Assembly (NCBI GenBank): GCA_002269645.1
Contig: NIVC01001907.1
Location: 1-64,000 of the forward strand
DNA: 64,000 bases
Source: Macrostomum lignano
Taxonomy: Eukaryota
Direction: 5' to 3'
This document shows positions 687 to 57,047 of the stretch, piece by piece. The notes beneath the pieces are model-generated. The model ran no database searches. It was not told where the DNA came from and saw only the letters and a list, made by a program, of their open reading frames with translations. The first letter of the stretch is position 1, and each line of letters starts with the position of its first letter. The translations under genes were made by a program, and so were the position numbers.

Positions 687-724
687 CTGGGGTGGGTGGA
701 GAATGAGGAATGTGAAGGTTCTGG

Positions 725-1432
725 GATTTGAGACTATGGGATATGGGATTTGAAGCTATGTGATATGGGATTTGAGGCTATGGGATATGGGATTTGAAGC
801 TATGTGATATGGGATTTGGGCTATGGGATATGGGATTTGAGGCTATGGGATATGGGATTTGAGGCTATGGGATATGGGATTTGAGGCTATGGGATATGGG
901 ATTTGAAGCTATGTGATATGGGATTTGAGGCTATGGGATATGGGATTTGAAGCTATGTGATATGGGATTTGGGGCTATGGGATATGGATTTGAGGCTATG
1001 GGATATGGGATTTGAGGCTATGGGATATGGGATTTGAGGCTATGGGATATGGGATTTGAGGCTATGGGATATGGGATTTGAAGCTATGGGATATGGGATT
1101 TGAGGCTATGGGATATGGGATTTGAAGCTATGGGATAGGGGATTTGAGGCTATGTGATATGGGATTTGAGGCTATGGGATATGGGATTGAGGCTATGGGA
1201 TATGGGATTTGAAGCTATGGGATATGGGATTGAGGCTATGGAAAATGGGATTGAGGCTATGGGATATGGGATTTGAGGCTATAGGATATGGGATTAGAGG
1301 CTATAGGATATAATATTTAAGGTTATGGGATATGGGATTAGAGGCTATAGGATATAAGATTTAAGGTTATGGGATATGGGATTTAAAGCTATGTGATATA
1401 TGATTTTAGGTTATGGGATATGGGATTTGAGG
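725..1432. repeat. 22-bp intronic minisatellite (GGCTATGGGATATGGGATTTGA)n
   Basis: Directly visible tandem array in MED23 intron 10. Confidence 0.95.
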
Positions 1433-1685
1433 CATGTGTCCTTGAGCAAGACACTCTTAACTCTGCACTGCTTCAGTTCACCCAGCTGTAGAATGGGTGC
1501 CATGGGTGCCCTAACCCCCCAGTCCTTAGACTGAACAGTCGTATGCAGCCTTCAGTTACGCCGCGCAATCGAAGTAATCAATTATACTGTGAATTATTAC
1601 TGGGATTAAGCACAAAATGATTTACGAGTACTATTTGTTAGCAAGATATGAATACTTAGAGATGCTATAAAAGTTCATCTTGTAC

Positions 1686-1871
1686 CAGGCATGCAGCCGA
1701 GCATTTCTGAAACAGCGGCTGAACAAAGTCGGATAGCAGCAGGCCGTCAGGATCTGCTTGCTGGTGAATCAGCTGGTGATTGATCTGCAGCAGTAGGTAT
1801 TTATTCAGCTCCTCCTGGTCGCTGCCGCAGATCCAAGCCACGTACAGCTTCTTCACGTGGTTGTTGGTGAC
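1686..1871 (-). CDS. MED23: MED23 exon 10
   Basis: CCCCAG|GTC ... CTG|GTACAA, 62 codons, phase 0/0. GSDQEELNKYLLLQI resembles human SAESEELNRALILTL. Confidence 0.85.
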
Positions 1872-1989
1872 CTGGGGGGATTGTACTAATAAGTATAACT
1901 GCATTGTACCCATTGCCTACCTGCCTACTAATGGTATTTACTAGTCTATCTACTACCCATTATACCCCTAATAGAACTATAATTATCCC

Positions 1990-2560
1990 TAATCTACCCA
2001 TGATATCTCTAATCTACCATGATATCTCTAATCTACCCATGATATCTCTAATCTATCCATGATATCTCTAATCTACCCATGATATCTCTAATCTACCCAT
2101 GACATCCCTAATCTACCCATTATATACCTAATCTACCCATTATATACCTAATCTACTCATTATATCCCTAATCTACCCACTATATCCCCAATCTACCTAT
2201 TATATCCCTAAGCTACACACTATATACCAAATCTACTCATTATATCCCTAAGCTACCCACTATATACCAAATCTACCCATTATATACCTAATCTACCCAT
2301 TATATACCTAATCTACCCATTATATACCTAATCTACCCATTATATACCTAATCTTCCCATTATATCCCTAATCTACCCATTATATCCCTAATCTACCCTT
2401 TATATACCTAATCTACCCATCATATCCCTAAGCTACCCATTATATCCCTAAGCTACCCATTATATCCCTAAGCTACCCATTATATCCCTAAGCTACCCAT
2501 TATATACCTAATCTACCCATTATATACCAAATCTACCCATTATATACCTAATCTACCCAG
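1990..2560. repeat. 20-bp intronic minisatellite (ATCTACCCATTATATACCTA)n
   Basis: Tandem array ending about 10 nt from the exon 9 donor. Confidence 0.95.
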
Positions 2561-2572
2561 CCCACAACCAAC

Positions 2573-3019
2573 CTGCAGAGCGGGAGTGAGCAAGGCTTGA
2601 GCCTGCCTATACAAGCACAGCTCAGTGTCCAGCCCCAGCCGGTTAGCCTTGGCCAGAGTGACCAGGTTCTGCAGCAACAGGTGCCTCTGCATGGGTTCAA
2701 CGCTGTTCAAGTGATACGTGGCCAGCTCGAACACAAAGGCCAACACTCTGCTTCCACCAGTGTTGCCAGCCTTAGTGAAGGCCTCCGTGAGTACAGATTT
2801 AGGCTGCAAATTCAAATCGTGATGCATGAGCACAGTGATCCTGGCGTACGTGTCCAGCACCACGGGACTGTCGGCATGGGTTGACAGCAGGTTGTACAGC
2901 AGACTGTTGATAGCCAGCAGTGACATTGTGGCTAACTGGCGTAGGCTGGAGTAAGATGGAGCAATGGCGTCTGATTGTTTGAGCGCTTCTACCAGCTTGG
3001 AGTTGAGCGGGCTGACCAC
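2573..3019 (-). CDS. MED23: MED23 exon 9
   Basis: CCGCAG|GTG ... CAG|GTTGGT, 149 codons. VVLDTYARITVLM..LAFVFELATYHLNSVEPMQRHLLLQNLVTLA resembles human LVETYSRLLVYM..LHTLLEMFSYRMHHIQPHYRVQLLSHLHTLA. Confidence 0.9.
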
Positions 3020-3199
3020 CTGCGGGTCATAGGGTCATGGTCTATGATTGTGCGATCATACACTTTTCGGAACTTTGGATGAATGATTTTGGAATCATGC
3101 GATATTAACATAGGGTCATGGAATAACGGAGATCAGTAAGGGACTTCCAAAAATGCGATTGAGAATGAGAATAGGATCATGTGACCCTGCAGAATATAA

Positions 3200-4420
3200 T
3201 TATGGGATCATAAGAGAATGTGATCATAGTCATAGAGAATGGGATCATAGGGTCATAGAGAATGGAATCATATGGTCATAGAGAATGGAATCATAGGGTC
3301 ACAGAGAATGGAATCATAGGGTCATAGAGAATGGAATCATAGGGTCATAAAGAATGCGATCATAGGGTCATAGAGAATGGGATCATAGGGTCATAGAGAA
3401 GGGGATCATAGGGTCATAGAGAATGGAATCATAGGGTCATAGAGAATGGAATCATAGGGTCATAAAGAATGGGATCATAGGGTCATAGAGAATGGGATCA
3501 TAGAGTCATAGAGAATGGGATCATAGTCATAGAGAATGGGATCATAGTCATAGAGAATGGGATCATAGTCATAGAGAATGGGATCATAGTCATAGAGAAT
3601 GGGATCACATACATAAATATTTAAATCATGGGATCATAGAGAATGGGATCATAGGGTCATAGAAAATGGGATCATAGAGTCATAGAGAACGGGATCAGAG
3701 TCACAGAGAACGGGATCAGAGTCATAGAGAATGGAATCATAGGGTCATAGAGAATGTGATCATAGTCATAGAGAATGGAATCATAGCGTCATAGAGAATG
3801 GGATCATAGGGTCATAGAGAATGGAATCATAGGGTCATAGGGAAGGGGATCAGAGTCATAGAGAATGGAATCATAGGGTCATAGAGAATGTGATCAGAGT
3901 CATAGAGAATGGAATCATAGGGTCATAGAGAATGTGATCAGAGTCATAGAGAATGGAATCATAGGGTCATAGAGAATGTGATCAGAGTCATAGAGAATGG
4001 AATCATAGGGTCATAGAGAATGTGATCAGAGTCATAGAGAATGGAATCATAGGGTCATAGAGAATGTGATCAGAGTCATAGAGAATGGAATCATAGGGTC
4101 ATAGAGAATGTGATCAGAGTCATAGAGAATGGAATCATAGGGTCATAGAGAATGTGATCAGAGTCATAGAGAATGGAATCATAGGGTCATAGAGAATGTG
4201 ATCAGAGTCATAGAGAATGGAATCATAGGGTCATAGGGAAGGGGATCAGAGTCATAGATAATGGAATCATAGGGTCATAGAGAATGTGATCAGAGTCATA
4301 GAGAATGGAATCATAGGGTCATAGGGAAGGGGATCAGAGTCATAGAGAATGGAATCATAGGGTCATAGAGAATGGGATCAAAGTCATAGAGAATGGAATC
4401 ATAGTCATAGGGAATATGAT
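3200..4420. repeat. 21/23-bp intronic minisatellite (CATAGAGAATGGAATCATAGGGT), with a 44-bp dimer in the right half
   Basis: Tandem array; 23- and 21-mers alternate from about 3870. Confidence 0.95.
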
Positions 4421-4482
4421 CATAGTCACACGCACGTAATGGGATTAGGGGATCAATGGGAAAACATCCCAGCGCTACAAAC

Positions 4483-4865: not shown

Positions 4866-5019
4866 CTGGTTTTGGTTGAAGGGAATTGAATATTAGCGAA
4901 ATGTTTGCATTGCTACTCAGTCAGTAGAGTAGTCCAAGTATGTTGCAATATCTATCTGAGCCAGGTGAGTGTCTCAGTTGACGATATGCGAGATTAGGGA
5001 AAAATAGCTGGCATACTAA

Positions 5020-5325
5020 GGGATCTGGGAGGCTGACCCAGCAACTGAGGATCTGGGAGGCTGGTACAGCAACTGAGGATCTGGGAGACTGGTACAGCAA
5101 CTGAGGATCTGGGAGGCTGACCCAGCAACTGAGGATCTGGGAGGCTGGTACAGCAACTGAGGATCTGGGAGGCTGGCCCAGCAACTGAGGATCTGGGAGG
5201 CTGACCCAGCAACTGAGGATCTGGGAGGCTGACCCAGCAACTGAGGATCTGGGAGGCTGGCCCAGCAACTGAGGATCTGGGAGGCTGACCCAGCAACTGA
5301 GGATCTGGGAGGCTGACCCAGAAAC
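5020..5325. repeat. 28-bp intronic minisatellite (GGGAGGCTGACCCAGCAACTGAGGATCT)n
   Basis: Tandem array next to the exon 7 donor; explains ORFs 4921-5352 and 5016-5240. Confidence 0.95.
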
Positions 5326-5337
5326 TGAGCTCAATAC

Positions 5338-5802
5338 CTTCCAAAACTCCAAGGCACATCTCGGGAAAGCGCACGAGATGCAGCCGACAAAGATGGATGC
5401 TGTACAGTCCCAGATGACGCCACATCATGTCTGCCCAAGCCATCTCGCTATCGGATTCGCAGGCCTCGGTCTCGTCGGCAGTCCACAGAATGGTGTCAAT
5501 CAAGCATCGCTCCAGAAACAGGCACCTGGATATCTTGCTAGCCCTTGGTGCCGTGTGCAGTGACAGAAGACTCAACAACAGGTCCATGCTGCCCTGCTGC
5601 GTGAGCACAGCCCTGATGAGGCTGGTATGCGGTCTCTGCAAGCACCTGGCATAGGGCAGGGGGCCCTTCAAATCCAGGGCGCCAGTCGAGGCCAGCAGAT
5701 TCACGGGCACATTGGTGACGCTGCTGGGCTGCGGATGCTGCAGAATGGCCGGCGGCATGCAGTAGTTGCCAACACCGGCTATGGGAACGATTTGACGGAT
5801 CA
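5338..5802 (-). CDS. MED23: MED23 exon 7
   Basis: CCCGCAG|TG ... GAAG|GTATTG, phase 1/1. LDLKGPLPY..MMWRHLG..FPEMCL resembles human FPLKGLLPY..LLWQHLS..FPHMVL. Confidence 0.9.
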
Positions 5803-5873
5803 CTGCGGGGGCGGAGCAGGCGGGTGAGTCATCTGCTACTCTGATCCAGCAGGAATGATTAGCAGCACCTTAC

Positions 5874-5943
5874 CTCTGTGCGAGAACATGTTGGCAACGT
5901 TTTTGAAGCTATTGCGAAATGTTTCCAGTTTGGTCTTTAAAAT
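5874..5943 (-). CDS. MED23: MED23 exon 6
   Basis: CCCTCAG|ATT ... AGAG|GTAAGG. ILKTKLETFRNSFKNVANMFSHR resembles human LLGNLVSDFVDTFRPTARINSIC; phases fit both neighbours. Confidence 0.85.
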
Positions 5944-6102
5944 CTGAGGGAGGAAAGTTATTGAGGATCTGCTGCTGGACTGATTGTGAATTTATCGATC
6001 ATTCTGTATAAAATATAGACACCCGTACGACTCTACTACGACTAGGACTACTACTACAACTTTTCTACTATTAGTCTACTACTGAAATACAGTGCCCAGT
6101 TG

Positions 6103-6375
6103 CCTGTGAACAGGGTCTGAGCAGACAGTAGTCTGTAAACAGGGTCTGAGCAGACAGCAGTCTGTAAACAGGGTCTGAGCAGACAGCAGTCTGTAAACAG
6201 GGTCTGAGCAGACAGCAGTCTGTAAACAGGGTCTGAGCAGACAGCAGTCTGTAAACAGGGTCTGAGCAGACAGCAGTCTGTGAACAGGGTCTGAGCAGAC
6301 AGCAGTCTGTGAACAGGGTCTGAGCAGACAGCAGTCTGTGAACAGGGTCTGAGCAGACAGCAGTCAGTGAACAGA
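6103..6375. repeat. 29-bp minisatellite (CAGGGTCTGAGCAGACAGCAGTCTGTAAA)n, expanded inside a hammerhead-bearing repeat monomer
   Basis: Tandem array; the same motif occurs single-copy near 7060 and 12475. Confidence 0.9.
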
Positions 6376-6821
6376 CGCCGCCAACTGCGACTCGTGACTT
6401 GTCTGGCTACATTAAAACAGTCTACCAGTACGACTCTACTAAGACTACGACTACTACGTCTGTGACCAGATGCCATGAACTGCTACTTGTGGCCGGTCTG
6501 GCCTACTCAAACTAATTTAATCTCGTATGTGCATCAAATTATTTACACTTCGTTAATTAGTCAGAGTTCTCAGTGCTCTATAACAATTATTTATTTTTCT
6601 AAATAACTTATTTGTAGTATTTTTCAAGCTGGTTAGTCACATTTCTAAGCTGTAATGCCTTAACCAGTCAGAGTGCTTTAATTCCCTCTTTGTATTAGCT
6701 ATATGTACGTGCATTTTTACACAACACTGCTCAGTGCACCCAGCCAAAGCTGGTACATAAATAATAATGTTATGAGGAAATAACTTCACTACCAAAATAA
6801 TTGCTACTTTATATACCCTCA

Positions 6822-6869
6822 AAATAAACCCTGACGAAGGCCATGATTTGGCCGAAATATCGGTTATTT
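6822..6869 (+). ncRNA. Type I minimal hammerhead ribozyme, best-preserved copy
   Basis: AACC-CUGACGA-A-GGCCA-UGAUU-UGGCC-GAAA-UA-UC^-GGUU: full catalytic core, helix I AACC/GGUU, 5-bp helix II, palindromic AUAU helix III. Predicted cleavage after C6861. Confidence 0.85.
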
Positions 6870-7251
6870 CAAAGTTTGACACCTGAAAACTTCAATCTTC
6901 CGTGTGCGTGGTTGCGGTTTCAGACTGTCTTATACTCGTAGATATCTCTATTTATCTATTTATCGATCTTTCGATCTATATATCCATCTATCTTTCTATC
7001 TATCTATGGATCAAATATACTTCATTAACTACTAAACGGCAGTGCCCAGTTGTCTGTGTCCAGGGACTGAGCAGACGGTGATCTGTGTCCAGACGCCGCC
7101 CACTGATACTTGTGGCTTGCCAGGATAAACAATTAAATTACTGCATATGCATCAGTATGTAATTATTTACCCTTCTTTAACCAGTTTAAGTAAGGTCGTA
7201 GTGCTCTGTAACAATTTAATTTACTTTAAAAACATTAGACACCAGTGAATG

Positions 7252-7385
7252 CGGCGGAAAGATCCTCCAACGCTGCGCATTGAGGGACAGGAATTAACCT
7301 ACGACCCGACACCCACGTTCCTTGGCCTTCGCCTAGACGACCAACTGACTTTCGCCAACCATATAGAGGCAGTGCGCAAAAGATG
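7252..7385 (+). mobile_element. Non-LTR retrotransposon RT C-terminal fragment
   Basis: LRIEGQELTYDPTPTFLGLRLDDQLTFANHIEAVRKR matches the (Y/F)LG..LD..LT(W/F)..HI motif of LINE RTs. Confidence 0.7.
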
Positions 7386-7466
7386 GCCACCAGGCGGCGT
7401 TGTCTGCAAAGTCTCGTTGGCAAATCCCAGGAAAATACTTCATCTTATTAAAGAGGAACCAATTTT

Positions 7467-8815
7467 TTGAAAGAATCCGGTGATGAAGAAGTCTTGCCTA
7501 CAGAGTTTTTGGTGGTGGCTGACTCAGCCCCTAATGCTGCTGCTTCTGGGCTTCCAGGCGGCCCTGCTTCTGCTGATTCTGGGCTTTCCGGCACTCCCGC
7601 TGCTGCTGCTGCCGAGGGCGCCCCTGCTGGTGTTGCTATTACTGTAAACTCCAGGGGTCCACGTGGAGTCCGTGGCCAAAAATGGCTGATTTGGAGTCCG
7701 CCCTCAATAAGCTAGAGCGCAATCCTCGGTTTGGAACGGACCTTATGTTAAAGGCGAATTTCGTCAACAAGTTTTTAACTTACATCATCAATGACGTCTT
7801 TAACAATTATAAAAGCCGGCAAGATCCGTATCTTTATGGAAAAGAGCTAAATGACATAACCATCTCCATCGTTTCTATGTACCCAGGAATGCGAGACGGG
7901 TCGAGCGATGGACTATTTTTTGGTGGCAGAAAATTCACCGAAGATTCGCTGCTAATTCCAGCAACTCCGGCATTTCCGCGTCGTGCATGGCGGAAAATGA
8001 TGAGGATAGTGACGAAGAAAACGTAGTTTCATTTGCAAGTAAGCGCCGAAAAATTGCTACCATCGTAGATGCGTCCGATGATGACGAAAACGTAGTACAA
8101 GCAAAGCGCCTGCAAGTCAACTGTGAGGATGCTGAGAGTACGACTACATCGACAAGCAAGCTTGTCAAAAGCGTCATTTTTGGAGATGTGGAATGCGTTC
8201 CTGAAAGTCACGAAGTTGACCGAATTAGGTTGAACAAAAATTTCCACACAATGGAAATCGAAGAGGTATTAAGCAATATGAAAAGTCTATTTAGTGTGCG
8301 AGTCGTGCGTTGCCAAGAGAGAACTGTTGAAGAGGAGGCTGAATTGTATAAGCCATTATCACTGCCACGTGTTCAGTTGCAAGAGGCATTTCTTATGATT
8401 CAGTTGTATAACTCTAGACGCAAGGCTGACTATGTGTTTCCTCGAACACCTGAGGATATTGAACAAAATGTATGCGGTGCACTCCGGCATGTGTGGCAAG
8501 AACGAGATGCAATGAAGCGGTACTTGTACTGCTAGCCGTTTCTGAACGCTGAATGTGATAACGACGACACCATTCTAATAAACGGCCTTTGCCTGCACCT
8601 TGATCGATTAAGGATTGACCCTGCGAAACTTTTTTGATACTGAGCTGCCAATTGAAATTCTGAAGGAAGGCGAAAGTAATTGCAATCTGTTCCGTATCGT
8701 TTACCTGCAGCATGTGCCCTATCTGGAAGCCTCCCTCGAGACGTATTAGAAGTATTGTGAAAACTCCCTCGACGTGATGCTGTGTCCTGCGCACCTTCCC
8801 AGTCGCTGATTGCTA
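7467..8815 (+). pseudogene. Frameshifted, stop-interrupted ORF of unknown family, probably TE-borne
   Basis: Successive overlapping + frames (7467-7715, 7682-8026, 7987-8535, then a further shifted frame) with protein-like composition and an acidic/NLS-like segment; no splice sites that rescue it. Confidence 0.45.
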
Positions 8816-9614
8816 TACTTCGTTAATAAAACTTTAACTTAGCATTCGACATTTTATTCGTATAATGAAAGTCTATGTTCCCCCTTAAACACCACCTAAG
8901 CTTAAGGTTTATTAATGTCTCCACTAATAAAAAACCCTTTAAACTTACCTTAATAAGTTTAACCCAATTACCGGCTACCTTAATAAACAAATGACAATTT
9001 TTCTTAATACAGAATTGATACTGCATAGCTATTTTTATACTGTTTATTCTTATATTAAGCTGAAGCTTGTAAATGGTATTGTCTGCAGCACTGGATCACT
9101 CATTTATATATAAAATCATGTATGACATTATAAAATATAAATTTAAAATATAAAATTTTTTTTATAATGTTTGCATCTAATTTTCGTGTAGTTCCATGTA
9201 ATTTTTGCATACTTTTTGACGTTGACGTAATAATTGAAATACTTTCATGCGTGTGTATGTATGTTGTATTAGTATTTCACGTTGCGAAAAAATAATAAAA
9301 CACCAAGTAATGAGTGTATGTCAATATACACTGCATGTGATAATTATAATACGATAGGGAGCATTTATCTGGCAGACAGATATTAGTGTTGTAATTCATG
9401 GTTACAAATTCAAGACTTGCATATCGTATAATTTTCTTCTTGTCAGTGATTTTTTTCGTATTATAATACAAAAATGATGGGTGTTCTCGATTGTGTACAT
9501 TAACTTTTTATTAAAAAGAATTTGCATCAGTTGATCTAACTTCTAAGCGTGCGAAAGCCAATAAATCTGAATTTAGCTAGTCAACCTTGCAAACGAAACT
9601 ACGCTCGTACATGC

Positions 9615-12058
9615 GGACCCTTCTTGCATTCGACCTTTAGGGTCCGTATATAGCGACGCCGCGGACCCTAACATACGGACCCCTGCCGGACCTTTTTTCG
9701 AACCCATACATTCGGACCTTTAGGGTCCGTATATAGCGACGCCGCGGACCTTAACATACGGACCCCTGCCGGACCTTTTTTCGAACCCATACATTCGGAC
9801 CTTTAGGGTCCGTATATAGCGACGCCGCGGACCCTAACATACGGACCCCTACTTGACCTTTTTTCGGATCCATACATTCGGACATTTGGGGTGTAGCGAC
9901 GCCGCGGACCTAACATACCGACCCCTACTTGACCTTTTTTCGGATCCATACATTCGGACATTTAGGGTCCGTATATAGCGACGCCGCGGACCCTAACATA
10001 CGGAACCCTACTGGACCTTTTTCGGATCCATACATTCGGACATTTGGGGTGAGCGACGCCGTGGACCTAACATACCGACCCCTACTTGACCTTTTTTCGG
10101 ATCCATACATTCGGACATTTGGGGTGTAGCGACGCCGCGGACCCTAACATACTGACCCCTACTGGACCTTTTTTCGGATCCATACATTCGGACATTTAGG
10201 GTCCGTATATAGCGACGCCGCGGACCCTAACATACGGACCCCTACTGGACCTTTTTTCGGATCCATACATTCGGACATTTGGGGTGTAGCGACGCCGCGG
10301 ACCTAACATACCGACCCCTACTTGACCTTTTTTCGGATCCATACATTCGGACATTTAGGGTCCGTATATAGCGACGCCGCGGACCCTAACATACGGACCC
10401 CTACTGGACCTTTTTCGGATCCATACATTCGGACATTTGGGGTGAGCGACGCCGCGGACCTAACATACCGACCCCTACTTGACCTTTTTTCGGATCCATA
10501 CATTCGGATATTTGGGGTGAGCGACGCCGCGGACCTAACATACCGACCCCTACTTGACCTTTTTTCGGATCCATACATTCGGACATTTGGGGTGTAGCGA
10601 CGCCGCGGACCCTAACATACCGACCCCTACTGGACCTTTTTTCGGATCCATACATTCGGATATTTAGGGTCCGTATATAGCGACGCCGCGGACCCTAACA
10701 TACGGACCCCTACTGGACCTTTTTCGGATCCATACATTCGGACATTTGGGGTGAGCGACGCCGCGGACCTAACATACCGACCCCTACTTGACCTTTTTTC
10801 GGATCCATACATTCGGACATTTGGGGTGAGCGACGCCGCGGACCTAACATACCGACCCCTACTTGACCTTTTTTCGGATCCATACATTCGGAAATTTGGG
10901 GTGTAGCGACGCCGCGGACCTAACATACCGACCCCTACTTGACCTTTCTTCGGATCCATACATTCGGACATTTGGGGTGTAGCGACGCCGCGGACCCTAA
11001 CATACCGACCCCTACTTGACCTTTTTTCGGACCCATACATTCGGACATTTAGGGTCCGTATATAGCGACGCCGCGGACCCTAACATACGGAACCCTACTG
11101 GACCTTTTTCGGATCCATACATTCGGACATTTGGGGTGTAGCGACGCCGCGGACCTAACATACCGACCCCTACTTGACCTTTTTTCGGATCCATACATTC
11201 GGACATTTAGGGTCCGTATATAGCGACGCCGCGGACCCTAACATACGGACCCCTACTGGACCTTTTTCGGATCCATACATTCGGACATTTGGGGTGAGCG
11301 ACGCCGCGGACCTAACATACCGACCCCTACTTGACCTTTTTTCGGATCCATACATTCGGATATTTGGGGTGAGCGACGCCGCGGACCTAACATACCGACC
11401 CCTACTTGACCTTTTTTCGGATCCATACATTCGGACATTTGGGGTGTAGCGACGCCGCGGACCCTAACATACCGACCCCTACTGGACCTTTTTTCGGATC
11501 CATACATTCGGATATTTAGGGTCCGTATATAGCGACGCCGCGGACCCTAACATACGGACCCCTACTGGACCTTTTTCGGATCCATACATTCGGACATTTG
11601 GGGTGAGCGACGCCGCGGACCTAACATACCGACCCCTACTTGACCTTTTTTCGGATCCATACATTCGGACATTTGGGGTGAGCGACGCCGCGGACCTAAC
11701 ATACCGACCCCTACTTGACCTTTTTTCGGATCCATACATTCGGAAATTTGGGGTGTAGCGACGCCGCGGACCTAACATACCGACCCCTACTTGACCTTTC
11801 TTCGGATCCATACATTCGGACATTTGGGGTGTAGCGACGCCGCGGACCCTAACATACCGACCCCTACTTGACCTTTTTTCGGACCCATACATTCGGACAT
11901 TTAGGGTCCGTATATAGCGACGCCGCGGACCCTAACATACGGACCCCTACTGGACCTTTTTCGGATCCATACATTCAGACATTTAGGGTGTAGCGACGCC
12001 GCGGACCCTAACATACCGACCAATACTTGACCTTTTTGGATCCCTGGGGTTTACAGTG
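9615..12058. mobile_element. Subterminal satellite (70-80-bp units) ending in a CACTG-type transposon terminus
   Basis: Units contain the inverted pair GGGTCCGTAT..ATACGGACCC; an 852-bp block is duplicated exactly (identical ORFs at 10318/11170). The array ends in GGGGTTTACAGTG, the reverse complement of CACTGTAAACCCC, as in animal CMC/EnSpm ends. Partner end not found. Confidence 0.6.
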
Positions 12059-12261
12059 TACAATTGAGCCGGTGGAGCCAATTCCTGATTGAATCAAGGA
12101 GTCTGATCAGACTATCGTGGCGGCAAATATTCTACCCGGCGTGTCGTTTTCCTACCGCCTGTCAGCGGTGCCGGGTATGCAGTGACTTAGAAGAACATAT
12201 ATATTTTATTTCCCACTAACAATATAAATTCGTTGCATTTTGTTATTAATAATTATACTAA

Positions 12262-12302
12262 GAACCCTGACGAAGGCCAATCCACAGCCGAAGTATCGGT
12301 TC
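12262..12302 (+). ncRNA. Hammerhead ribozyme copy 2 (GAAA>GAAG variant)
   Basis: GAACC-CUGACGA-A-GGC..GCC-GAAG-UA-UC-GGUUC; helix I perfect, one core substitution. Confidence 0.7.
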
Positions 12303-12832
12303 ACTAAATTGATTTATATTAGTTATGACCTCTGCGTCTCTCTTTGATATTTCTTGGCTAACTTAGTTAGAGCTGCTAATGTGTGAGTGGTCTTTTTCAA
12401 ACGTCTATTTATCTATCAATGAATCAAATATACTTCATCAACTACTGAACGGCACTGCCCAGTTGTCTGTGTCCAGGGACTGAGCAGAAAGTGGTCTACT
12501 CGTATGTCCAGACGCCGCCAACTGATAGCCTGATAGTTTGATAGCCTAAGTGAGGTCTCAGTGCTCTATAACAATTTAATTTACTTTTTTTAAAACGTAT
12601 TCATTATACCTTTCAAGCTGTTTAGTCACACTTTAATAATCGTTCAATGTGACTTTATATAGCTCCTAATGCCTATAATTTTTTGTGTGAGGCATTAGCC
12701 GCAAAGCTCTAACCAATCAGTGTGCTTTAATACACTTTTTACACAACACTGTTTAGTGCACCCAGACAAAGCTGGTGTATAAATAACCTGGTTATGATGC
12801 AATAACTTCACTGTCAAAATTTTATTTTCTTT

Positions 12833-12871
12833 TAACCTGACGAAGGCCACGATTTTGCCGAAATATTGGTA
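12833..12871 (+). ncRNA. Hammerhead ribozyme copy 3 (degenerate)
   Basis: AAC-CUGACGA-A-GGC-CACGAUUUU-GCC-GAAA-UA-UU-GGU; core intact, helix I and cleavage site decayed. Confidence 0.6.
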
Positions 12872-13680
12872 GTTTTGAAGAAAAGTACGACTTCTGATTT
12901 CTGCTTTATTCATATTTATCGATAGAATAGATATCGATAGCTGGTGAAACCCGCAAATCGCAGCATCAGCAGCAGTCAAACCGTCGGAGACCTGATACCC
13001 AGTACCATCTTCGGAGGGATGGGCGCCGGTCAAGGTCGCAAGACAGAGGCTCTGAGAATGTCACCATCATTGTACTCGTACTCGTAAACGTCGAAGTGCG
13101 AAAGGTGCGATGACAGTAGACAATGCCCGGCTGGTTCGGTTGGTCAAGAAACTCTTCCCGATCTGTTCATCACTATGAAAACTGTCAGACCATCCCAAAA
13201 TAACTGCAAAGCAAAACAGAACAACTCAAGACTTTTATTCGACCGGCCATGCCAACCAAGAGGACTGAGGAGAACGTCCGATTGAACGCAGACACCTGAG
13301 ATGTGAGCACCCAGGACGCAATGCAAAGTCATTGTGAAGAATGAATCTTTTGAACGACTTCCACAATTAAGGGAAGCGTTCAAGGGAGTCGACAGCGAAA
13401 GACGGTTCAACTGTGACTCGACGGTGTTACGGTAAGTTACGAATTGTGTTTGAAAAAAATGGAACTTGGAAATCCTCTATAAAAGACATTCTGTGCCCAT
13501 CCAAACCCCCGTGCACTGACTGCACGTGGTCAAGCCGGGTTAGTTCATCAGTTTATCTCTCATCGCTGCGCTCCCATCACTTCTAACAATTTATTGATTT
13601 TAATGTCCCCAGCAAACTCTTTTTGAGTGCTCATATTTTATAAACCATTGCTTTACTGTTTCTCGCAAAACAAATTTTCG

Positions 13681-13719
13681 GACCCTGACGAAAGCTACGA
13701 TTTGGCCGAAAATTTGGTC
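13681..13719 (+). ncRNA. Hammerhead ribozyme copy 4 (degenerate)
   Basis: GACC-CUGACGA-A-AGCU..GGCC-GAAA-AU-UU-GGUC; helix I GACC/GGUC covaries with the other copies. Confidence 0.6.
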
Positions 13720-13829
13720 TAGTTTATAAACAAATCAAATTGTACCTTCTCTCACTGTGTGTGCGGTTTTTTAATTGATTTCGTCTTTCTATCTATCTAT
13801 CTATCTATAAATCAGCCCAGCAGCCTCAC

Positions 13830-13934
13830 CGGATGCAGATTGGTCTGCTCAGCCGGGGGCAGTTTAGTCACTTCGTGCAGAGCAAAATAGGCGGGCATCA
13901 GGCAAAGCGAGCGATCCATCAGGGTGGTGATGAG
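13830..13934 (-). CDS. MED23: MED23 exon 5
   Basis: CCCGCAG|CTC ... CCG|GTGAGG, 35 codons. LITTLMDRSLCLMPAYFALHEVTKL resembles human VIAYILERNACLLPAYFAVTEIRKL. Missed by the ORF track. Confidence 0.92.
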
Positions 13935-14164
13935 CTGCGGGTTCAGTGGGTGTCACAGACAGTTATAAAGCAATAAATAATTTCGAGTTGTAGCTCGTAA
14001 GTAAGATAAATATTTGATTTAAAAGAAATCGACAGTAAGCAACTTTATTACACACGGGTAAACTTCTAAATCTTACTAAAGCTTCAATAAATTCCATAGA
14101 AATTCTCTACTTATTTCTTGTATTTATTAGCCTCAATTGTCGGATAAAAAAAACAACTTGTACA

Positions 14165-14335
14165 GTTGAAAGCGTCATTTGTAGGATTCCAAAGGCGCCA
14201 TTTGTTGAATTTTAAAAGCGCCATTTGTGAGAATTAAAAAACGAAATTTTTAGGATTTAAAAAGCGCCATTTGTAGGCTTTAAAAAGTGCCATTTGTTGA
14301 ATTTAAAAGGCGCCATTTGTGAGATTTAAAAGCGT
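14165..14335. repeat. Degenerate ~25-bp minisatellite (AAAAGCGCCATTTGT core)
   Basis: About six imperfect copies in MED23 intron 4. Confidence 0.8.
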
Positions 14336-14367
14336 TGTTAAACAAACAAAACAATATTGCAACAAAC

Positions 14368-14566
14368 CTTGAACGCAGGAACAAAGACTTTGTCTTCACC
14401 TTCGCTGAAAGTCTTGTACAAGCCCAACACTTTTCCAAACAGATCCCTGCAGCCTTTGTAGTCCATCTGTCTGACCAGACGATCCATCACTGTCACGGCC
14501 TCTTTAAAGAAGGCCGGATTTCGCATGATATCGTCGTGAGAGACCAACAACTCGTCACAGATGTGC
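14368..14566 (-). CDS. MED23: MED23 exon 4
   Basis: CTACTCAG|G ... AAG|GTTTGT. HICDELLVS..RQMDYKGCRDLFGKVL resembles human LVCESLINS..GGVDYKGVRDLLKVIL. Confidence 0.92.
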
Positions 14567-14767
14567 CTGAGTAGGGGTGATTTTCGTTCGGGGCGACACT
14601 TTGAAACTGAGTTTTATAAACTGGGCAAAACGAACCGAATAACTCAGCCTTAATGAATCCATGAACAGCTAACTCATTCATGATGTGAAAGTGTGAGAGA
14701 GCATCTTAATAATAGATGTTGTACACCATTTATTGTAACCAAGCAAACATTACTGAAAGGCACTAAC

Positions 14768-14943
14768 TTGGCAGACAGTAATCCGCTGTTAATAAGCGGA
14801 TAAAATACTTCCAGACAGCTGACTAACACGCGATCAAGGAACTCCTCCATGACGTGGCTGATGTACAGTTTCACTGCTCGTTTGCGGTCCTCCTGAAAGT
14901 TGAGAATGTACTTTTTTGAAGACGAAAAATCTTTTTTCAGGAC
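14768..14943 (-). CDS. MED23: MED23 exon 3 (acceptor inferred from phase)
   Basis: Donor GCCAA|GTTAGT (phase 2, fits exon 4). CLEVFYPLINSGLLSAK resembles human LYDCLAMAVETGLLPPR. Phase-0 acceptor TTGAAG|GTC has a weak pyrimidine tract. Confidence 0.8.
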
Positions 14944-14962
14944 CTTCAACGGTTTGCTAAAC

Positions 14963-15655
14963 TTTGTCCCTGAACCTTTAGTGGACTGCTCAGCCTTGTC
15001 CCTGAACCTTTAGTGGACTGCTAACCCTTGTTGCTGAACCTTTAGTGGACTGCTAACCCTTGTTGCTGAACCTTTAGTGGACTGCTAATTCTTGTCCCTG
15101 AACCTTCAGTAGCCTATTCAGTCTTGCCCCTGAACCTTCAGTAGCCTACTCAGTCTTGTCCCTGAACCTTCAGCAGCCTACTCAGTCTTGTCCCTGAACC
15201 TTCAGTAGCCTATTCAGTCTTGCCCCTGAACCTTCAGTAGCCTACTCAGTCTTGTCCCTGAACCTTCAGCAGCCTACTCAGTCTTGTCCCTGAACCTTCA
15301 GTAGCCTACTCAGTCTTGCCCCTGAACCTTCAGTAGCCTATTCAGTCTTGCCCCTGAACCTTCAGTAGCCTACTCAGTCTTGTCCTTGAACCTTTAGTAG
15401 CCTACTCAGTCTTGTCCTTGAACCTTCAGTGGCCTATACAGTCTTGTTCCTGAACCTTCAGCGGTCTGTTAACTCTTGTCCCTGAGCTTCCAGTGGTTGC
15501 TAACTCTTGTCCCTGAACCTTCAGTGTCTGTTAACTCTTGTCCCTGAGCTTCCAGTGGTTGCTAACTCTTGTCCCTGAACCTTCAGTGTCTGTTAACTCT
15601 TGTCCCTGAGCTTCCAGTGGTTGCTAACTCTCGTCCCTGAACCTTGTCACTGAAC
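14963..15655. repeat. 31-32-bp intronic minisatellite (CTTGTCCCTGAACCTTCAGTAGCCTACTCAGT variants)
   Basis: Fills nearly all of MED23 intron 2, with a gradient of unit variants. Confidence 0.95.
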
Positions 15656-20307: not shown

Positions 20308-23300
20308 TCCATATACTAAAAATGAGTTGTTTGTATGTTTGCTTGTGCGCAATTGATTATTTCCCGAATGGCTCAACCAATTTTGTTTAAACTTGCACCA
20401 TTTGATTAGAAATTTTTCCGTGACGGTACATGCATTGTGGCTAAGAAATTGCTAGATGCTAAAGGGATTAAATATTCAAAAAACATGCTTTTTTGCAAAT
20501 CCAATATACTAAAAATCAAAACTATGTACCTACCTATCTATATATCTATAGGAACCTTCGTTTAACTTGACTTTGCGTGGTCCGAATTTTGTGGGGTTTT
20601 CTGCATTTGATGCGTATTGATGGTGCGCTGGTACACAACATTTTGCTAAGAAATTGCTTCATTTTTTCGGGATTAAATATTTGAAAAACTCGATTTTTGC
20701 CCCGTTTTTTAAAGTTCAAACAGTTCTTTCCGATTGAGAAGCATTCTGACTGCCAATGGAATTGTATTGCATCATAACTCAGTGCCAACTATAGCATTGG
20801 TTCTCTACACTGGCGTGGACAGCTACAAGCGTTAAAAGGTTGCGCAACACATTTTAGTTATTGAAATTGAGGGGCGGGAGTTGCTATTCAATTAGTCCTG
20901 GGCATTGGCTTGGTTGTTAATTTTAATGCACCAACTTGCAGGCCTCTCACTGTAGCTGGCGCTGAATGTACACCTTTATGAATTTGACTGCTTTAAAGCA
21001 GGAATATCCAATCGTTGTTTGTGCTTCGAGTTTTTCACTTTCAGAAGAGAGCCTTGTATTGCTGGAAAGAGCTTAAAACGCTGAGTTCGGGAATATAATT
21101 TGTTTGCTGAGATTCGAAAAATTAAAAGCACAGCTTTAAAAAGAGGATTTCTATGCATTTTACTATATATGCTCATTGTACGCTCTCCAATAACGCAAAC
21201 CCCTACTTTATCGCAACTCCACAATTCAAGCCAGCGCCATTGGATTTCAATTTAGATTGCGTAACTACATTGTTGACTTTAATTGTTGACTTCATTAATT
21301 GAAACTGGTATTGACTGCCTGAGAAATTGATTATGTCATTACTTGCTTTGAGTGATTTCTACTCTATGCTGGGAGTTTTCAAAGTGTTGAGTGCTACAAT
21401 TCATGTTATCAAAACGATGAGACCTAGCCTAGAGGTGAACACACTGAACTGCTAATGCAGCAAAGTGGGTTCGAATTTTCAGTGTGTAAATTTTTTTTAT
21501 TAACAATTTTAATTTTAAGACAGGTAAAGGAAACTTTAACAAAAATGTCAGGTAAATCAGGTAAAAGAGAAGAAGCTACGAGCGTTCATGTAGTGTATTA
21601 AATTTTTTTATTAAACTTTAAATTTTGATAAGGATTATTGCACTAGATAAGAAATTATTTATTGTACTAGCTGAGGAAATTGTTTTACTATCTCGCTTGG
21701 GGTACTTTCTATCAGGGGATGCTTGCTATTGGCTGATGCTTGCTCGGGGGAGATTGCTAAGATGTCAAGACTCACTGGGGAATCACTGAGATATAAATGC
21801 TTATAGGGGGAATTACTGAGATGTCAAGGCATAGGGGGAATTGCTGAGATGTCAAGACTTTGACTTACTGGGGAATAATTCAGATATGCAGGCTTACTGG
21901 GGGAATTACTGAGATGTCAAGGCTTAAAAGGGACTTGCTGAGATGCCAAGGCTTAGGAGGAAATCGCTGGGATTTCAAGGCGTGGCGGGAATTTCTGAGA
22001 TGTCAAGTTGTGGGGGGAATCGCTGAGATGTCAGGGCTTTTGACGGGGAGAAATTGCTAAGGTGTGAAGACTTACTAGGGGAATCACTGAGATATAATAA
22101 AGGCTTATAGGGGGAATTGCTAAGATGTCAAGTCTTAAGGGGGAATTTATGAGACGTCAAGTATTGGGTGGGAATTCCTGAAATTTCAACTTTTGAGAGC
22201 AAATTGCTGAGATGTCAAAGCTTAAGAGAGAATTACTGAGGTGTCAAGGCTCATTTGGGATTGGGGATTCTTTACATGAGGGCTGCTTCTAATGGATATC
22301 TTTAGATAGGCGATTCATTGCTAAATTCCTTCGATGGGGGATTCTTTCGATGGAGGGTTCTTTGAATGGGGGATTCTTTAGATGAAGGATTCTTTCGATA
22401 AAGGGATCCTTTGGATATGGGATTATTTGGACGAGGATTCTTTAGATGAGGGGATTCTTTGGCGTAGGATTCTATTGATGGGGGATTATTTGGATGGGAG
22501 ATTCTTTGGATTCTTTTGATGGGGATTCTGTGGATGGGGATTTTTGGATGGGTATTATTTGGAGTCGGATTCTTTGGATTATTTGGACGGGCTTCTTTAG
22601 ATAAGGGGACTCTTTGGCCAATGATTCTTTTGATGGAGGTTTATTTGGATGAGAGAATATTTGCATTATTTTGATCGGGATTCTGTGGATAGGGATTATT
22701 TGGATTGGGATTCCTGAGGGGGGATTTTTTGGATATGGATGGAGGTCGGGGATTCTTTGGATAGGGATGGATGGGGAGATTCTTTGGATAGGGATGTATA
22801 GGCCGGGGGATTCTTTGGATAGGGGATTCTATCGATGGGGGATTCCTTGAATAGGGGATTCATTGGATGGGGAATTCTTTGGATTGGGATTCTATTGGAG
22901 GGGGTTCTTTGAATGGGGGATCATTTAGATGAAGGATTCTTTAGATAAGGGTTATTTTCATGGGGGTTCTTCAGATGAGGGAATTCTTTAGCCAAGAATT
23001 CTATTGATTTGGGGATTATTTGGATGGGAGATTCTTTGGATTCTTTGGATGGGGATTATTTTGACGGGTTTCTGTTGATGAGGGAATTATTTGGCCAATT
23101 TTTTTTATGGGGGATTATTTTGATGGGAGATCTAAGAATTATTTGGATGGGGATGGGGATGGGGATTATGATGTGAATTATTTGGATGGGGATTCTTTGG
23201 CGGGGGATTCATTGGATATGAATGGATGGGGGATTCTTTAGATAGGAATGGATGGGGAAATTTTTTTGATAGGGATAGATGGGGGATTCTTTGGATAGGG

Positions 23301-31310: not shown

Positions 31311-31314
31311 TGAA

Positions 31315-39113: not shown

Positions 39114-39380
39114 TCGACACACGGAGAAACAATCCTTACTTAAACTCTTTTCTATATTACATGTACTTAAAGAAATCTGTTGACTCTGTATCCAGTATTC
39201 TAAACTGAGCACATTATTTTCTCTCGATAGTCACCTTGTGCTGAATTTGTATTTCATAACGACTTGTAAATTTCCCCAGCCGTTTCTGTGCCAATCGTCG
39301 AACCTACTGCAACCTATGAAAACATTATTATAGGAGCTCGAAGAGCCAATAATATTGGCTAAGAAAATACAAAAATACAA

Positions 39381-56982: not shown

Positions 56983-57015
56983 TGACTGACTGACTGACTG
57001 ACTGACTGACTGACT

Positions 57016-57047
<32 letters not shown>

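What the first reader, a model, noticed from the sequence alone, without database searches (positions are those of the whole stretch)
6070..13810. Tandem hammerhead-ribozyme repeat (retrozyme/Penelope-like) hidden antisense in a MED23 intron
Seen: four copies of CUGACGA-A-[helix II]-GAA(A/G)-[2 nt]-U(C/U), each with a different but self-consistent helix I (AACC/GGUU, GAACC/GGUUC, GACC/GGUC; decayed in copy 3). Copy 1 has a complete core and palindromic AUAU helix III. Each lies in a diverged monomer sharing a CCAAT/TATA-like module, a CAGTGCCCAGTTG module and a CTAT tail. HHR2 to HHR3 is 570 nt; HHR1 to HHR2 is about 620 nt once the intervening ~4.8-kb TE block is removed. Established: minimal type I hammerheads with palindromic helix III occur in Penelope-like elements and non-LTR retrozymes and cleave as dimers, yielding monomer or circular RNAs. 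Inference: a non-coding, self-cleaving retroelement family with larger monomers than typical metazoan retrozymes. All copies are on +, antisense to MED23, so the pre-mRNA would be spared.
Basis: partly seen in the sequence, partly recalled or inferred. Interest (0 to 1): 0.78.

Follow-up and report, generated by a model that had tools for sequence, protein, structure and literature searches.

The report
Penelope-type hammerhead repeats in flatworm intron
An intron of the MED23 gene of the flatworm Macrostomum lignano holds four head-to-tail, mostly decayed copies of a small non-coding mobile element. Each copy carries the minimal self-cutting "hammerhead" RNA motif typical of Penelope-like retrotransposons, so this is a real but ordinary example of a known kind.

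Summary
Four hammerhead-like motifs lie on the + strand at 6831, 12267, 12837 and 13685, against 0 expected by chance. They are antisense to MED23 exons of Macrostomum lignano (contig NIVC01001907.1).

Copy 1 (6827-6865) meets every sequence feature of the Penelope-like-element "minimal hammerhead". It has CUGANGA and GAAA boxes, an extra base between A9 and G10.1, a G10.1-C11.1 pair, palindromic AUAU helix III, C17 and a 4-bp helix I. Copies 2-4 each carry a defect.

The same core, with covarying helix I and a palindromic helix III, recurs in independent animal-derived metagenome contigs.

Three units are one diverged family (75-90% identity). The fourth shares only the hammerhead and the 3' module. 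All end in a (CTAT)n-like tail.

No reverse transcriptase or GIY-YIG endonuclease lies nearby. No other genomic copies could be fetched.

The claimed ~620-nt HHR1-HHR2 monomer is not supported. The 570-nt monomer is within the published range.

Caveats: monomer folding favours a competing hairpin, the AUAU dimer helix is very weak, and cleavage is untested.

Verdict: a new member of a known kind, of modest interest.

The parts
6075..7010 (+). Unit E1, about 940 nt. It is enlarged by an internal 29-nt minisatellite and a 34-nt duplication. It contains the TATA-like module, HHR1, the 3' module and a CTAT-like tail.
   Evidence: BLAST of units against the window; alignment A3; repeat families D5, D6, D9 and D12.
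6104..6374 (+). 29-nt tandem repeat (9.3 copies) expanded from a segment that occurs about 1.4 times in units E2 and E3.
   Evidence: Tandem Repeats Finder; family D5.
6714..6798 (+). Promoter-like module (CATAAATA at about 6756), 85% identical to 12736-12820 in E3. Function is inferred only.
   Evidence: Family D9.
6827..6865 (+). HHR1, the only copy with a complete minimal-hammerhead consensus: AACC / CUGACGA / A / GGCC-AUGAUUU-GGCC / GAA / AUAU / C17 (6861) / GGUU. The predicted cut is 3' of C6861.
   Evidence: Top hit of covariance model R1 in the window (26.9 bits, E 1.3e-5).
6943..7010 (+). Degenerate (CTAT)n-like tail ending unit E1. Unit E2 starts directly after it.
   Evidence: Family D7; sequence.
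7011..7237 (+). Unit E2, 5' part only. It is 85-90% identical to the 5' part of E3, and homology stops at about 7237.
   Evidence: families D6 and D10.
7238..12261 (.). About 5.0 kb of unrelated sequence between E2-left and HHR2. It holds ORFs without family matches (7577-8532) and a 2.4-kb satellite (9568-12037; 75-nt subunits, 309/385-nt higher-order units). It is not part of the hammerhead element.
   Evidence: No homology of 12040-12270 to E1 or E3.
12262..12420 (+). HHR2 unit, a fragment of about 160 nt with no recognisable upstream unit sequence. HHR2 spans 12262-12302: GAACC / CUGACGA / A / GGCC..AGCC / GAA / GUAU / C12297 / GGUUC. Defects are G at 15.1 and a 3-bp helix II. The 3' module and CTAT-like tail follow.
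   Evidence: R1 score 15.4 bits, E 0.037.
12421..12945 (+). Unit E3, about 525 nt and the most compact full unit. HHR3 spans 12832-12872: UUAAC / CUGACGA / A / GGCC..UGCC / GAA / AUAU / U12867 / GGUAG. Helix I has an A.G mismatch, helix II is 3 bp, and position 17 is U.
   Evidence: R1 score 19.6 bits, E 0.002.
12946..13812 (+). Unit E4, a different body (48% GC, no similarity to E1-E3) that shares only the hammerhead and the 3' module. HHR4 spans 13680-13720: GGACC / CUGACGA / A / AGCU..GGCC / GAA / AAUU / U13715 / GGUCU. The 10.1-11.1 position is an A.C mismatch. A (CTAT)n tail at 13785-13812 lies about 20 nt from the MED23 5' splice site.
   Evidence: R1 scores it only 9.1 bits, E 2.9.
13815..13952 (-). 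MED23 exon bounding the intron on the gene's 5' side (reading-frame limits; GTGAGG donor read at about 13832).
   Evidence: Pfam Med23 profile positions 166-199, E 1.7e-5; sequence.
4997..5869 (-). Open frame containing the MED23 exon on the 3' side of the intron. A further small exon at about 5866-5943 was read by eye.
   Evidence: Pfam Med23 profile positions 224-359, E 1.1e-13; sequence.

Best explanation
The locus is an old head-to-tail cluster of short, non-coding, hammerhead-bearing retroelement copies. They lie in a MED23 intron of Macrostomum lignano, antisense to the gene. The likeliest identity is non-autonomous derivatives of Penelope-like elements (PLEs), or units equivalent to their terminal repeats (pLTRs).

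Composition (shown): three units are one diverged family. The fourth is a different unit that shares only the about 130-nt 3' end. That shared end consists of the hammerhead, a GTGTG..GGTTTT stretch and a (CTAT)n tail.

Proposed mechanism (inferred from what is published for this class, not shown here):
1. A unit is transcribed, either from its own TATA-like module 60-75 nt upstream of the ribozyme or by read-through.
2. Two hammerheads on one multimeric RNA pair through their palindromic helix III (AUAU or AAUU) to form the active dimer.
3. Each hammerhead cuts after position 17 (C6861 in copy 1). This releases unit-length RNA with 5'-OH and 2',3'-cyclic phosphate ends.
4. That RNA can be ligated into a circle and copied by a PLE reverse transcriptase supplied in trans.
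5. New copies integrate preferentially at microsatellites, which would build the head-to-tail arrangement.

At this locus only copy 1 still looks competent. Copies 2-4 are probably dead.
For: The motif is real and specific:
- It occurs 4 times, against 0 expected.
- Copy 1 meets all features listed for PLE minimal hammerheads in PMC4209133. [quoted passage not shown]

Structure-preserving variation:
- The helix I pair at columns 7-45 is AU, AU, UA and GC in the four copies.
- Helix III is AUAU in copies 1 and 3 and AAUU in copy 4. Both are palindromes.

Conservation across families: E4 shares nothing with E1-E3 except the hammerhead block and the 3' module. This is what is described for non-autonomous PLE derivatives that share 3' ends with their partners (PMC8557442).

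Independent relatives:
- A metagenome scan used only the core and helix II as the pattern.
- It returned 97 unique hits. 29 of them have a perfect palindromic helix III and a complementary helix I of at least 4 bp, against 6.9 in a swap control.
- These hits span at least 14 different helix I strand pairs and 4 different helix III palindromes.
- A covariance model built from those sequences ranks copies 1, 3 and 2 as the three best hits in the window (E 1.3e-5, 0.002, 0.037).

Element-like context:
- The units are AT-rich (37% GC).
- They have no protein-family match.
- No tRNA-like part or other Rfam family was found.
- E2 and E3 begin at the same position right after the previous unit's tail (family D6).
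Against: - No cleavage, transcript or circular-RNA data could be obtained.
- Rfam hammerhead models give no hit even at E<=10. They also miss the clear control motifs in metagenome loci, so this weighs little.
- As single strands the four copies fold best into a competing hairpin (GGCCGA/UCGGUU). This hairpin sequesters G12 and C17 and is intact in all four copies.
- The AUAU/AUAU helix III duplex is predicted unstable (+1.6 kcal/mol). The values are -1.7 for ACGU and -4.6 for ACAUGU in other families.
- Three of the four copies carry changes expected to impair catalysis: G15.1, an A.C mismatch at 10.1-11.1, and shortened helices.
- No PLE reverse transcriptase or GIY-YIG endonuclease ORF lies in the 64-kb window.
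- No other genomic copies could be retrieved. Dispersal and mobility are therefore untested.
- Four related sequences give weak covariation statistics (16 of 500 shuffles reach the observed score).
Confidence: 0.6

Rival explanations
1. The units are not a separate non-coding family. They are pLTRs or 5'-truncated 3' ends of one or two autonomous Penelope-like elements that inserted repeatedly at the same microsatellite. E4's GC-richer body would then be a decayed 3' part of the coding element.
For: - PLE insertions are typically 5'-truncated, form partial tandems and favour microsatellites (PMC8557442).
- The hammerhead sits in the pLTR of PLEs (PMC4209133).
- The HHR2 unit looks like a 160-nt 5'-truncated copy.
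- E4's body is 48% GC against 37% for the other units.
Against: - E2 and E3 start at the same nucleotide after the preceding tail and share a defined 5' module (family D6). This fits a full-length short unit better than random truncation.
- No RT or GIY-YIG signal was found in E4 or anywhere in the window.
Confidence: 0.2
2. The conserved block acts as a simple hairpin (GGCCGA-loop-UCGGUU), for example as a reverse-transcriptase recognition or 3'-end signal. On this reading the hammerhead resemblance is vestigial or incidental and no self-cleavage occurs.
For: - The hairpin is intact in all four copies (26 of 28 cells paired).
- Its pair at columns 30-45 takes four different standard forms: GU, AU, UA and GC.
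- It is the RNAalifold consensus and part of the minimum-energy fold of copies 1, 3 and 4.
- Column 30 follows column 45 rather than its hammerhead partner, column 22. That partner pair is broken in 2 of 4 copies.
Against: - It leaves the invariant CCUGACGAAG block unexplained.
- The hairpin is not possible in the independent families that share the same core.
- Helix I covaries as well.
- Shuffle support is weaker than for the hammerhead (59 of 500 against 16 of 500).
- The two folds may coexist as a switch.
Confidence: 0.08
3. The array is a local tandem duplication at the DNA level (satellite-like, by unequal crossing-over) of a sequence that happens to contain a fossil hammerhead. There would be no retrotransposition of these units.
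For: - This genome region is full of mini- and microsatellites.
- E1 itself carries an expanded 29-nt repeat.
- The family is seen only at this locus within the window.
Against: - A unit of a different family (E4) with the same 3' module sits in the same orientation at the end of the array.
- Every unit ends in the same kind of tail. This points to repeated insertion rather than duplication.
- Divergence of 10-25% between neighbours argues against recent unequal exchange.
Confidence: 0.07
4. The motifs are chance matches to a short degenerate motif in AT-rich repeats.
For: - The hammerhead core is short.
- The four copies are not independent, because three belong to one repeat family.
Against: - No hits in 100 shuffles, even for one copy under the strict descriptor.
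- The block is the only similarity between two otherwise unrelated units.
- All accessory features of the PLE class that the pattern did not require are present: the extra A, the palindrome and helix I.
Confidence: 0.02

Closest known systems
Minimal hammerheads (min-HHR) in the pLTRs of Penelope-like elements, especially the Cercyon-associated families of the flatworm Schistosoma mansoni (Cervera & de la Pena 2014, PMC4209133)
   Same: - Type I order, CUGANGA and GAAA boxes, and an unpaired nucleotide between A9 and 10.1.
- G10.1-C11.1 pair, a 4-5-bp open helix I and a tiny palindromic helix III that implies dimeric action.
- High sequence heterogeneity between copies.
- The host is a platyhelminth.
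   Different: - Helix II here is 4 bp with a 7-nt loop, against the 7-8 bp reported for S. mansoni.
- No RT-EN ORF lies between or beside the copies in this window.
- Copies are direct repeats 570-850 nt apart. The reported arrangements are about 3 kb apart or inverted pairs.
Non-LTR retrozymes of metazoans (Cervera & de la Pena 2020, PMC7229834; Li et al. 2026 preprint 10.64898/2026.07.22.740005)
   Same: - Non-coding, AT-rich, head-to-tail units with one type I hammerhead each.
- Proposed processing into unit-length or circular RNA and mobilisation by PLE enzymes.
- The 570-nt monomer lies within the reported 51-972 bp range.
   Different: - Retrozymes were defined on canonical hammerheads with a 6-bp helix I and loop1-loop2 contacts. 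These copies are the minimal PLE type.
- Only one clean hammerhead-to-hammerhead monomer exists here.
- The units have a defined microsatellite tail.
- No expression data are available.
Non-autonomous PLE derivatives that share the 3' end of an autonomous family and form multicopy head-to-tail insertions (e.g. MRC1/Chlamys, Craig et al. 2021, PMC8557442)
   Same: - Short non-coding units in head-to-tail arrays.
- Similarity between different units is confined to the 3' end.
- Association with microsatellites.
   Different: - Those elements are from green algae and lack canonical hammerheads.
- The autonomous partner is unknown here.
Sm-alpha SINE of Schistosoma and the hammerhead satellites of newts and cave crickets (from my own knowledge plus the citations in PMC4209133)
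   Same: Repetitive, non-coding, hammerhead-bearing DNA in animals. Short helix III and cleavage as dimers or multimers.
   Different: - Those carry canonical hammerheads.
- Sm-alpha is tRNA-derived with a pol III promoter, whereas no tRNA-like part is found here.
- Satellite arrays there are long and homogeneous.

Membership tests
PLE-type minimal hammerhead (min-HHR) | Catalytic boxes CUGANGA and GAAA in type I order (helix I open) | tested here: met
   CUGACGA is present in 4 of 4 copies. GAAA is present in copies 1, 3 and 4, and GAAG (G at 15.1) in copy 2.
PLE-type minimal hammerhead (min-HHR) | Extra unpaired nucleotide between A9 and 10.1 | tested here: met
   An A is present in all four copies. 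The feature is listed in PMC4209133.
PLE-type minimal hammerhead (min-HHR) | Conserved G10.1-C11.1 pair closing helix II | tested here: met
   G-C in copies 1-3 and A.C in copy 4 (columns 19-33).
PLE-type minimal hammerhead (min-HHR) | Very short palindromic helix III / loop 3 (dimer-forming) | tested here: met
   AUAU in copies 1 and 3, and AAUU in copy 4. GUAU in copy 2 is self-complementary only through G.U pairs. The predicted duplex stability is poor.
PLE-type minimal hammerhead (min-HHR) | Helix I of 4-5 bp with compensatory variation between copies | tested here: met
   90% of cells are paired. Two pairs have changes on both sides. 16 of 500 shuffles reach the covariation score. Only four sequences are available.
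PLE-type minimal hammerhead (min-HHR) | Similarity to independent members, scored with a covariance model built from metagenomic min-HHRs | tested here: met
   Model R1 gives copy 1 E 1.3e-5, copy 3 E 0.002, copy 2 E 0.037 and copy 4 E 2.9. The test is partly circular, because the training set was fished with this core.
PLE-type minimal hammerhead (min-HHR) | Match to the curated Rfam hammerhead families | tested here: inconclusive
   No hit at E<=10. Clear min-HHR controls in loci L012, L091, L074, L043, L006, L023 and L026 are also missed.
PLE-type minimal hammerhead (min-HHR) | Location in the terminal repeat of an element encoding RT plus GIY-YIG endonuclease | tested here: not met
   No RT or GIY-YIG match near the copies or anywhere in the window, apart from one LTR-type RT fragment at 31279-31968. 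The rest of the genome could not be searched.
PLE-type minimal hammerhead (min-HHR) | Self-cleavage 3' of position 17 | not testable with these tools
   Needs in vitro transcription or RNA end mapping.
Non-LTR retrozyme | Head-to-tail tandem repeats with one hammerhead per monomer | tested here: met
   Spacings are 5436, 570 and 848 nt in the same orientation. Only HHR2-HHR3 is an uninterrupted monomer, and the fourth unit is a different family.
Non-LTR retrozyme | Canonical type I hammerhead (6-bp helix I, 4-bp helix II, loop1-loop2 tertiary contacts) | tested here: not met
   Helix I is 4-5 bp and open, and the extra nucleotide at 9/10.1 is present. This is the minimal PLE type (definition in PMC7229834).
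Non-LTR retrozyme | Non-coding, low GC (<50%), no LTR/PBS/PPT | tested here: met
   GC is 33-39%. No protein-family hits. No pseudo-protein relatives. No inverted or long terminal repeats.
Non-LTR retrozyme | Monomer size within the known range | tested here: met
   570 nt lies above the 150-450 bp of the 2020 description but inside the 51-972 bp of the 2026 preprint.
Non-LTR retrozyme | Expression as linear and circular unit-length RNA | not testable with these tools
   No transcript data are accessible.
Sm-alpha-like SINE | tRNA-derived 5' part with pol III boxes | tested here: not met
   ARAGORN finds nothing in 5800-14000. No Rfam family other than chance matches.

The most novel reading that the evidence does not exclude
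This M. lignano family may carry a built-in conformational switch.
- The 3' strand of helix I (column 45) can pair either with the 5' strand of helix I (column 7), giving the active hammerhead, or with the 3' strand of helix II (column 30).
- The second pairing forms a hairpin that buries G12 and C17.
- In all four copies column 45 is complementary to both partners: U with A and G, U with A and A, A with U and U, C with G and G.
- Such a switch could keep ligated circular monomers uncut while allowing cleavage in nascent multimers.
- Combined with a unit-internal TATA-type promoter, this would make the unit a self-transcribing, self-regulating retrozyme.
Probability: 0.15. Interest if true: 0.55.

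Novelty: new member of a known kind. Interest (0 to 1): 0.3.

Why it matters
- It adds the regeneration model Macrostomum lignano to the animals with Penelope-type hammerhead repeats. No paper in the searchable library links this species to hammerhead ribozymes.
- It gives a concrete locus, with one intact and three decayed copies, for testing dimeric cleavage and circular-RNA formation in a transgenic-capable flatworm.
- It shows that standard Rfam annotation misses this ribozyme class entirely, including clear control motifs.
- It does not change what is known about how such elements work.

Tried and rejected
- Rfam at gathering and at E<=10 gave no hammerhead. Controls showed that the models do not cover minimal hammerheads, so the negative result was set aside.
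- I tried to fetch other M. lignano copies by searching the translated unit as a pseudo-protein profile. Nothing was found.
- I tried to fetch homeologous MED23 introns through a MED23 exon. Nothing was found.
- I tried to sample the genome through an RT fragment. Nothing was found at E<=1e-20, a threshold I set too strictly.
- Exact look-ups of three window ORFs were not on record.
- I looked for a PLE ORF by scanning 115 ORFs of the window against Pfam. The hits were Med23, an LTR-type RT fragment, mariner transposase remnants (Transposase_1, HTH_48), a glycosyltransferase and two weak matches (Neur_chan_LBD, Tropomyosin). No PLE-type RT or GIY-YIG endonuclease was found.
- I looked for PLE ORFs next to the metagenomic relatives. 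Pfam and PDB gave nothing diagnostic.
- Supplementary PLE sequences of Craig et al. 2021 are not held.
- I tested whether HHR2's upstream flank is the missing part of unit 2. Alignment scores equalled those of shuffled sequence, so the '620-nt monomer' was rejected.
- An SL-RNA, snRNA or tRNA-SINE identity was considered and dropped.
- The dimeric hammerhead cannot be evaluated with nearest-neighbour cofolding, because the topology crosses.

Full report
**Source and setting**

A 401-aa ORF of the window is on record only in contig NIVC01001907.1 of assembly GCA_002269645.1, at the same coordinates as in the window. Papers tie this accession to the Macrostomum lignano Mlig_3_7 genome. The window is therefore the first 64 kb of a flatworm contig.

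Pfam Med23 matches lie on the minus strand at 2543-3034 and 4997-5869 (profile positions 224-359) and at 13815-13952 (positions 166-199) and 14341-14613. The interval from about 5944 to 13832 is thus a MED23 intron. Everything described below is on the opposite (+) strand.

**The observation**

The degenerate pattern CTGACGAARSY-N5-12-RSCGAAR occurs four times, at 6831, 12267, 12837 and 13685. All four are on +, and none appeared in 100 shuffles.

I wrote a strict minimal-hammerhead descriptor. It requires a helix I of at least 4 bp, CUGANGA, 0-1 extra base, a helix II of at least 3 bp, GAA, an A...U helix III and a non-G at position 17. It finds only copy 1 in the window and nothing in 100 Markov shuffles. 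Allowing one mismatch per helix recovers all four copies plus five background hits, against a shuffle mean of 2.65.

Copy 1 reads AACC / CUGACGA / A / GGCC-AUGAUUU-GGCC / GAA / AUAU / C6861 / GGUU.

The ungapped alignment of the four copies and the pair counts show the following.
- Helix I is 90% paired, and its pair at columns 7-45 is AU, AU, UA and GC.
- Helix II is 81% paired.
- Helix III is AUAU, GUAU, AUAU and AAUU.

Each of the other copies has a defect.
- Copy 2 has G at 15.1 and a 3-bp helix II.
- Copy 3 lost a C in the 5' strand of helix I (an A.G mismatch results), has a 3-bp helix II and has U17.
- Copy 4 has an A.C mismatch at 10.1-11.1 and U17.

**Anatomy of the locus**

BLAST, MAFFT and the repeat finder show three units of one family.

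| Unit | Coordinates | Notes |
|---|---|---|
| E1 | about 6075-7010 | Inflated by a 29-nt minisatellite at 6104-6374 |
| E2 | 7011-7237 | 5' part only |
| E3 | 12421-12945 | Most compact full unit |

They are 75-90% identical where comparable. E2 and E3 begin at the same position, immediately after the previous unit's CTAT-like tail (family D6).

E1 and E3 share an 85-nt module with CATAAATA/TATAAATA 60-75 nt upstream of the hammerhead (family D9). Its promoter function is only inferred.

The module CAGTGCCCAGTTG is in E1, E2 and E3 only.

HHR2 is preceded by about 5.0 kb of unrelated sequence. This holds unclassified ORFs and a 2.4-kb satellite. The 230 nt directly upstream of HHR2 align to E1 and E3 no better than shuffled sequence. 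HHR2 is therefore best seen as a fragment of about 160 nt.

Only HHR2 to HHR3 (570 nt) is a clean monomer.

E4 (12946-13812) has a different, GC-richer body (48% against 37%). It shares with the others only the hammerhead block and the downstream 3' module, GTGTG..GGTTTT plus (CTAT)n.

No inverted repeats, tRNA-like parts or protein-family matches occur in the units. No PLE-type RT or GIY-YIG ORF occurs anywhere in the window.

**Independent relatives**

I scanned JGI metagenome contigs with CTGACGAAGGCC-N5-9-GGCCGAAA, that is, the core plus helix II only. This gave at least 120 loci.

Of 97 unique hits, 29 have a perfectly palindromic helix III and a contiguous helix I of at least 4 bp. Neither feature was in the pattern. 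A control that swaps upstream flanks among hits gives 6.9.

The hits fall into families with different helix I sequences (UCAG/CUGA, CCAG/CUGG, CAAC/GUUG, AAAAAC/GUUUUU, CUCC/GGAG, CGCAU/AUGCG). They also have different palindromes (ACGU, ACAUGU, AUAU, AUAAUUAU).

The contigs are animal DNA; fn3 and Ig domains are present. Several show closely spaced inverted hammerhead pairs, an arrangement reported for PLEs.

A covariance model built from 15 of these sequences ranks copies 1, 3 and 2 as the top three hits in the window (E 1.3e-5, 0.002, 0.037). Copy 4 is not significant.

Rfam detects none of these control motifs. This explains its silence on the window.

**Comparison with the literature**

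Cervera & de la Pena 2014 define PLE minimal hammerheads by exactly the accessory features seen here. [quoted passage not shown] They report such motifs for the flatworm Schistosoma mansoni, with low in vitro activity and only as dimers or trimers.

Non-LTR retrozymes were defined on canonical hammerheads in 150-450-bp tandem repeats. A 2026 preprint reports consensus lengths of 51-972 bp, about 43% of Xenopus copies in introns, and derivation from PLE pLTRs. The monomer size and the intronic site are therefore unremarkable.

Craig et al. 2021 describe 5' truncation, partial tandems, a microsatellite target bias, and non-autonomous derivatives that share 3' ends. These fit the tails and the E4/E1-E3 relationship.

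No paper in the library links Macrostomum to hammerhead ribozymes.

**Caveats on function**

- As single strands, copies 1, 3 and 4 fold best into a hairpin. It pairs the 3' strand of helix II plus G12 and A13 with U16.1, C17 and the 3' strand of helix I.
- This hairpin is intact in all four copies. Its pair at columns 30-45 is GU, AU, UA and GC. It is also the RNAalifold consensus.
- For copy 1 the hammerhead fold is -10.4 kcal/mol against an MFE of -12.9. For copy 2 the MFE is hammerhead-like. For copy 3 the hammerhead fold is not stable.
- The AUAU self-duplex is +1.6 kcal/mol, so dimerisation would need help from stacking or from proteins.
- With four related sequences the covariation statistics are weak for either fold.
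- Column 45 is complementary to both alternative partners in every copy. This is compatible with a cleavage/ligation switch, but it may be coincidence. The hairpin is not possible in the other families.

**Conclusion**

Its class assignment (Penelope-like/retrozyme hammerhead repeats, antisense in a MED23 intron) is supported at the sequence level.

The locus is best described as a decayed cluster of non-autonomous PLE-type units with one intact minimal hammerhead. It is a new member of a known kind.

Three questions remain open: whether the family is dispersed, whether it is separate from an autonomous PLE, and whether any copy cleaves. I could not obtain further M. lignano sequence.

Noticed in passing
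L026 1-6150 and L040 1-6104 (metagenome contigs Ga0209783_1001268 and JGI26670J51741_10000560): The same element of about 6023 nt occurs in two samples with terminal redundancy; the first 100 nt recur at 6023. It carries a minimal-hammerhead-like motif almost identical in core to the window's (CGCAU/CUGACGA/A/GGCC..GGCC/GAA/AUAU/U/AUGCG). It also has two same-strand ORFs of 711 and 624 aa with no Pfam or PDB match and no GDD motif. It could be a circular or tandemly repeated replicon or element with a hammerhead.
   Followed up: partly
window 6849-6866, 12286-12302, 12855-12872, 13704-13720: An alternative hairpin (GGCCGA-tetraloop-UCGGUU) overlaps the hammerhead core and cleavage site. It is intact in all four copies, with four different standard pairs at one position. 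It is the thermodynamic consensus fold.
   Followed up: partly
window 9568-12037: A 2.4-kb satellite of 75-84-nt subunits is organised in 309/385-nt higher-order repeats. It lies between unit E2 and HHR2. Weak chance matches to the Rfam Corona_FSE model fall inside it.
   Followed up: partly
window 7577-8532 (+): Two overlapping open frames (149 and 226 aa stop-to-stop) inside the 5-kb block have no family match. Just upstream, at 7249-7467, is a short frame that by eye resembles the C-terminal RT region of non-LTR retrotransposons. Pfam did not confirm this.
   Followed up: partly
window 722-4428, 5021-5329, 14169-15645, 21746-23548, 41752-43717, 51699-53533 and others: The MED23 introns and the rest of the window are unusually dense in minisatellites (periods of 16-47 nt, up to 1.8 kb). 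They also hold kilobase-scale tetranucleotide arrays: (ACTG)n at 39380-40938 and 56981-58359, (GTCA)n at 50058-50735, (CTGT)n at 60970-61469 and (CTAT)n at 62099-62301.
   Followed up: no
window 24360-25161 (+) and 31279-31968 (-): Mariner-type transposase remnants (HTH_48 and Transposase_1) and an LTR-retrotransposon-type reverse transcriptase fragment. Both appear degraded.
   Followed up: no
window 55389-56594 (+): An intact single-exon 401-aa gene with a DXD glycosyltransferase domain (Gly_transf_sug). It was the only window protein found on record in the public gene collection.
   Followed up: partly
L043 15-117, L093 7138-7229, L073 2627-2728, L008 946-1025, L038 2-81: In one metagenomic hammerhead family, two motifs sit head-to-head on opposite strands about 60 nt apart. 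This is the inverted arrangement described for Penelope-like insertions. It contrasts with the direct repeats in the window.
   Followed up: no
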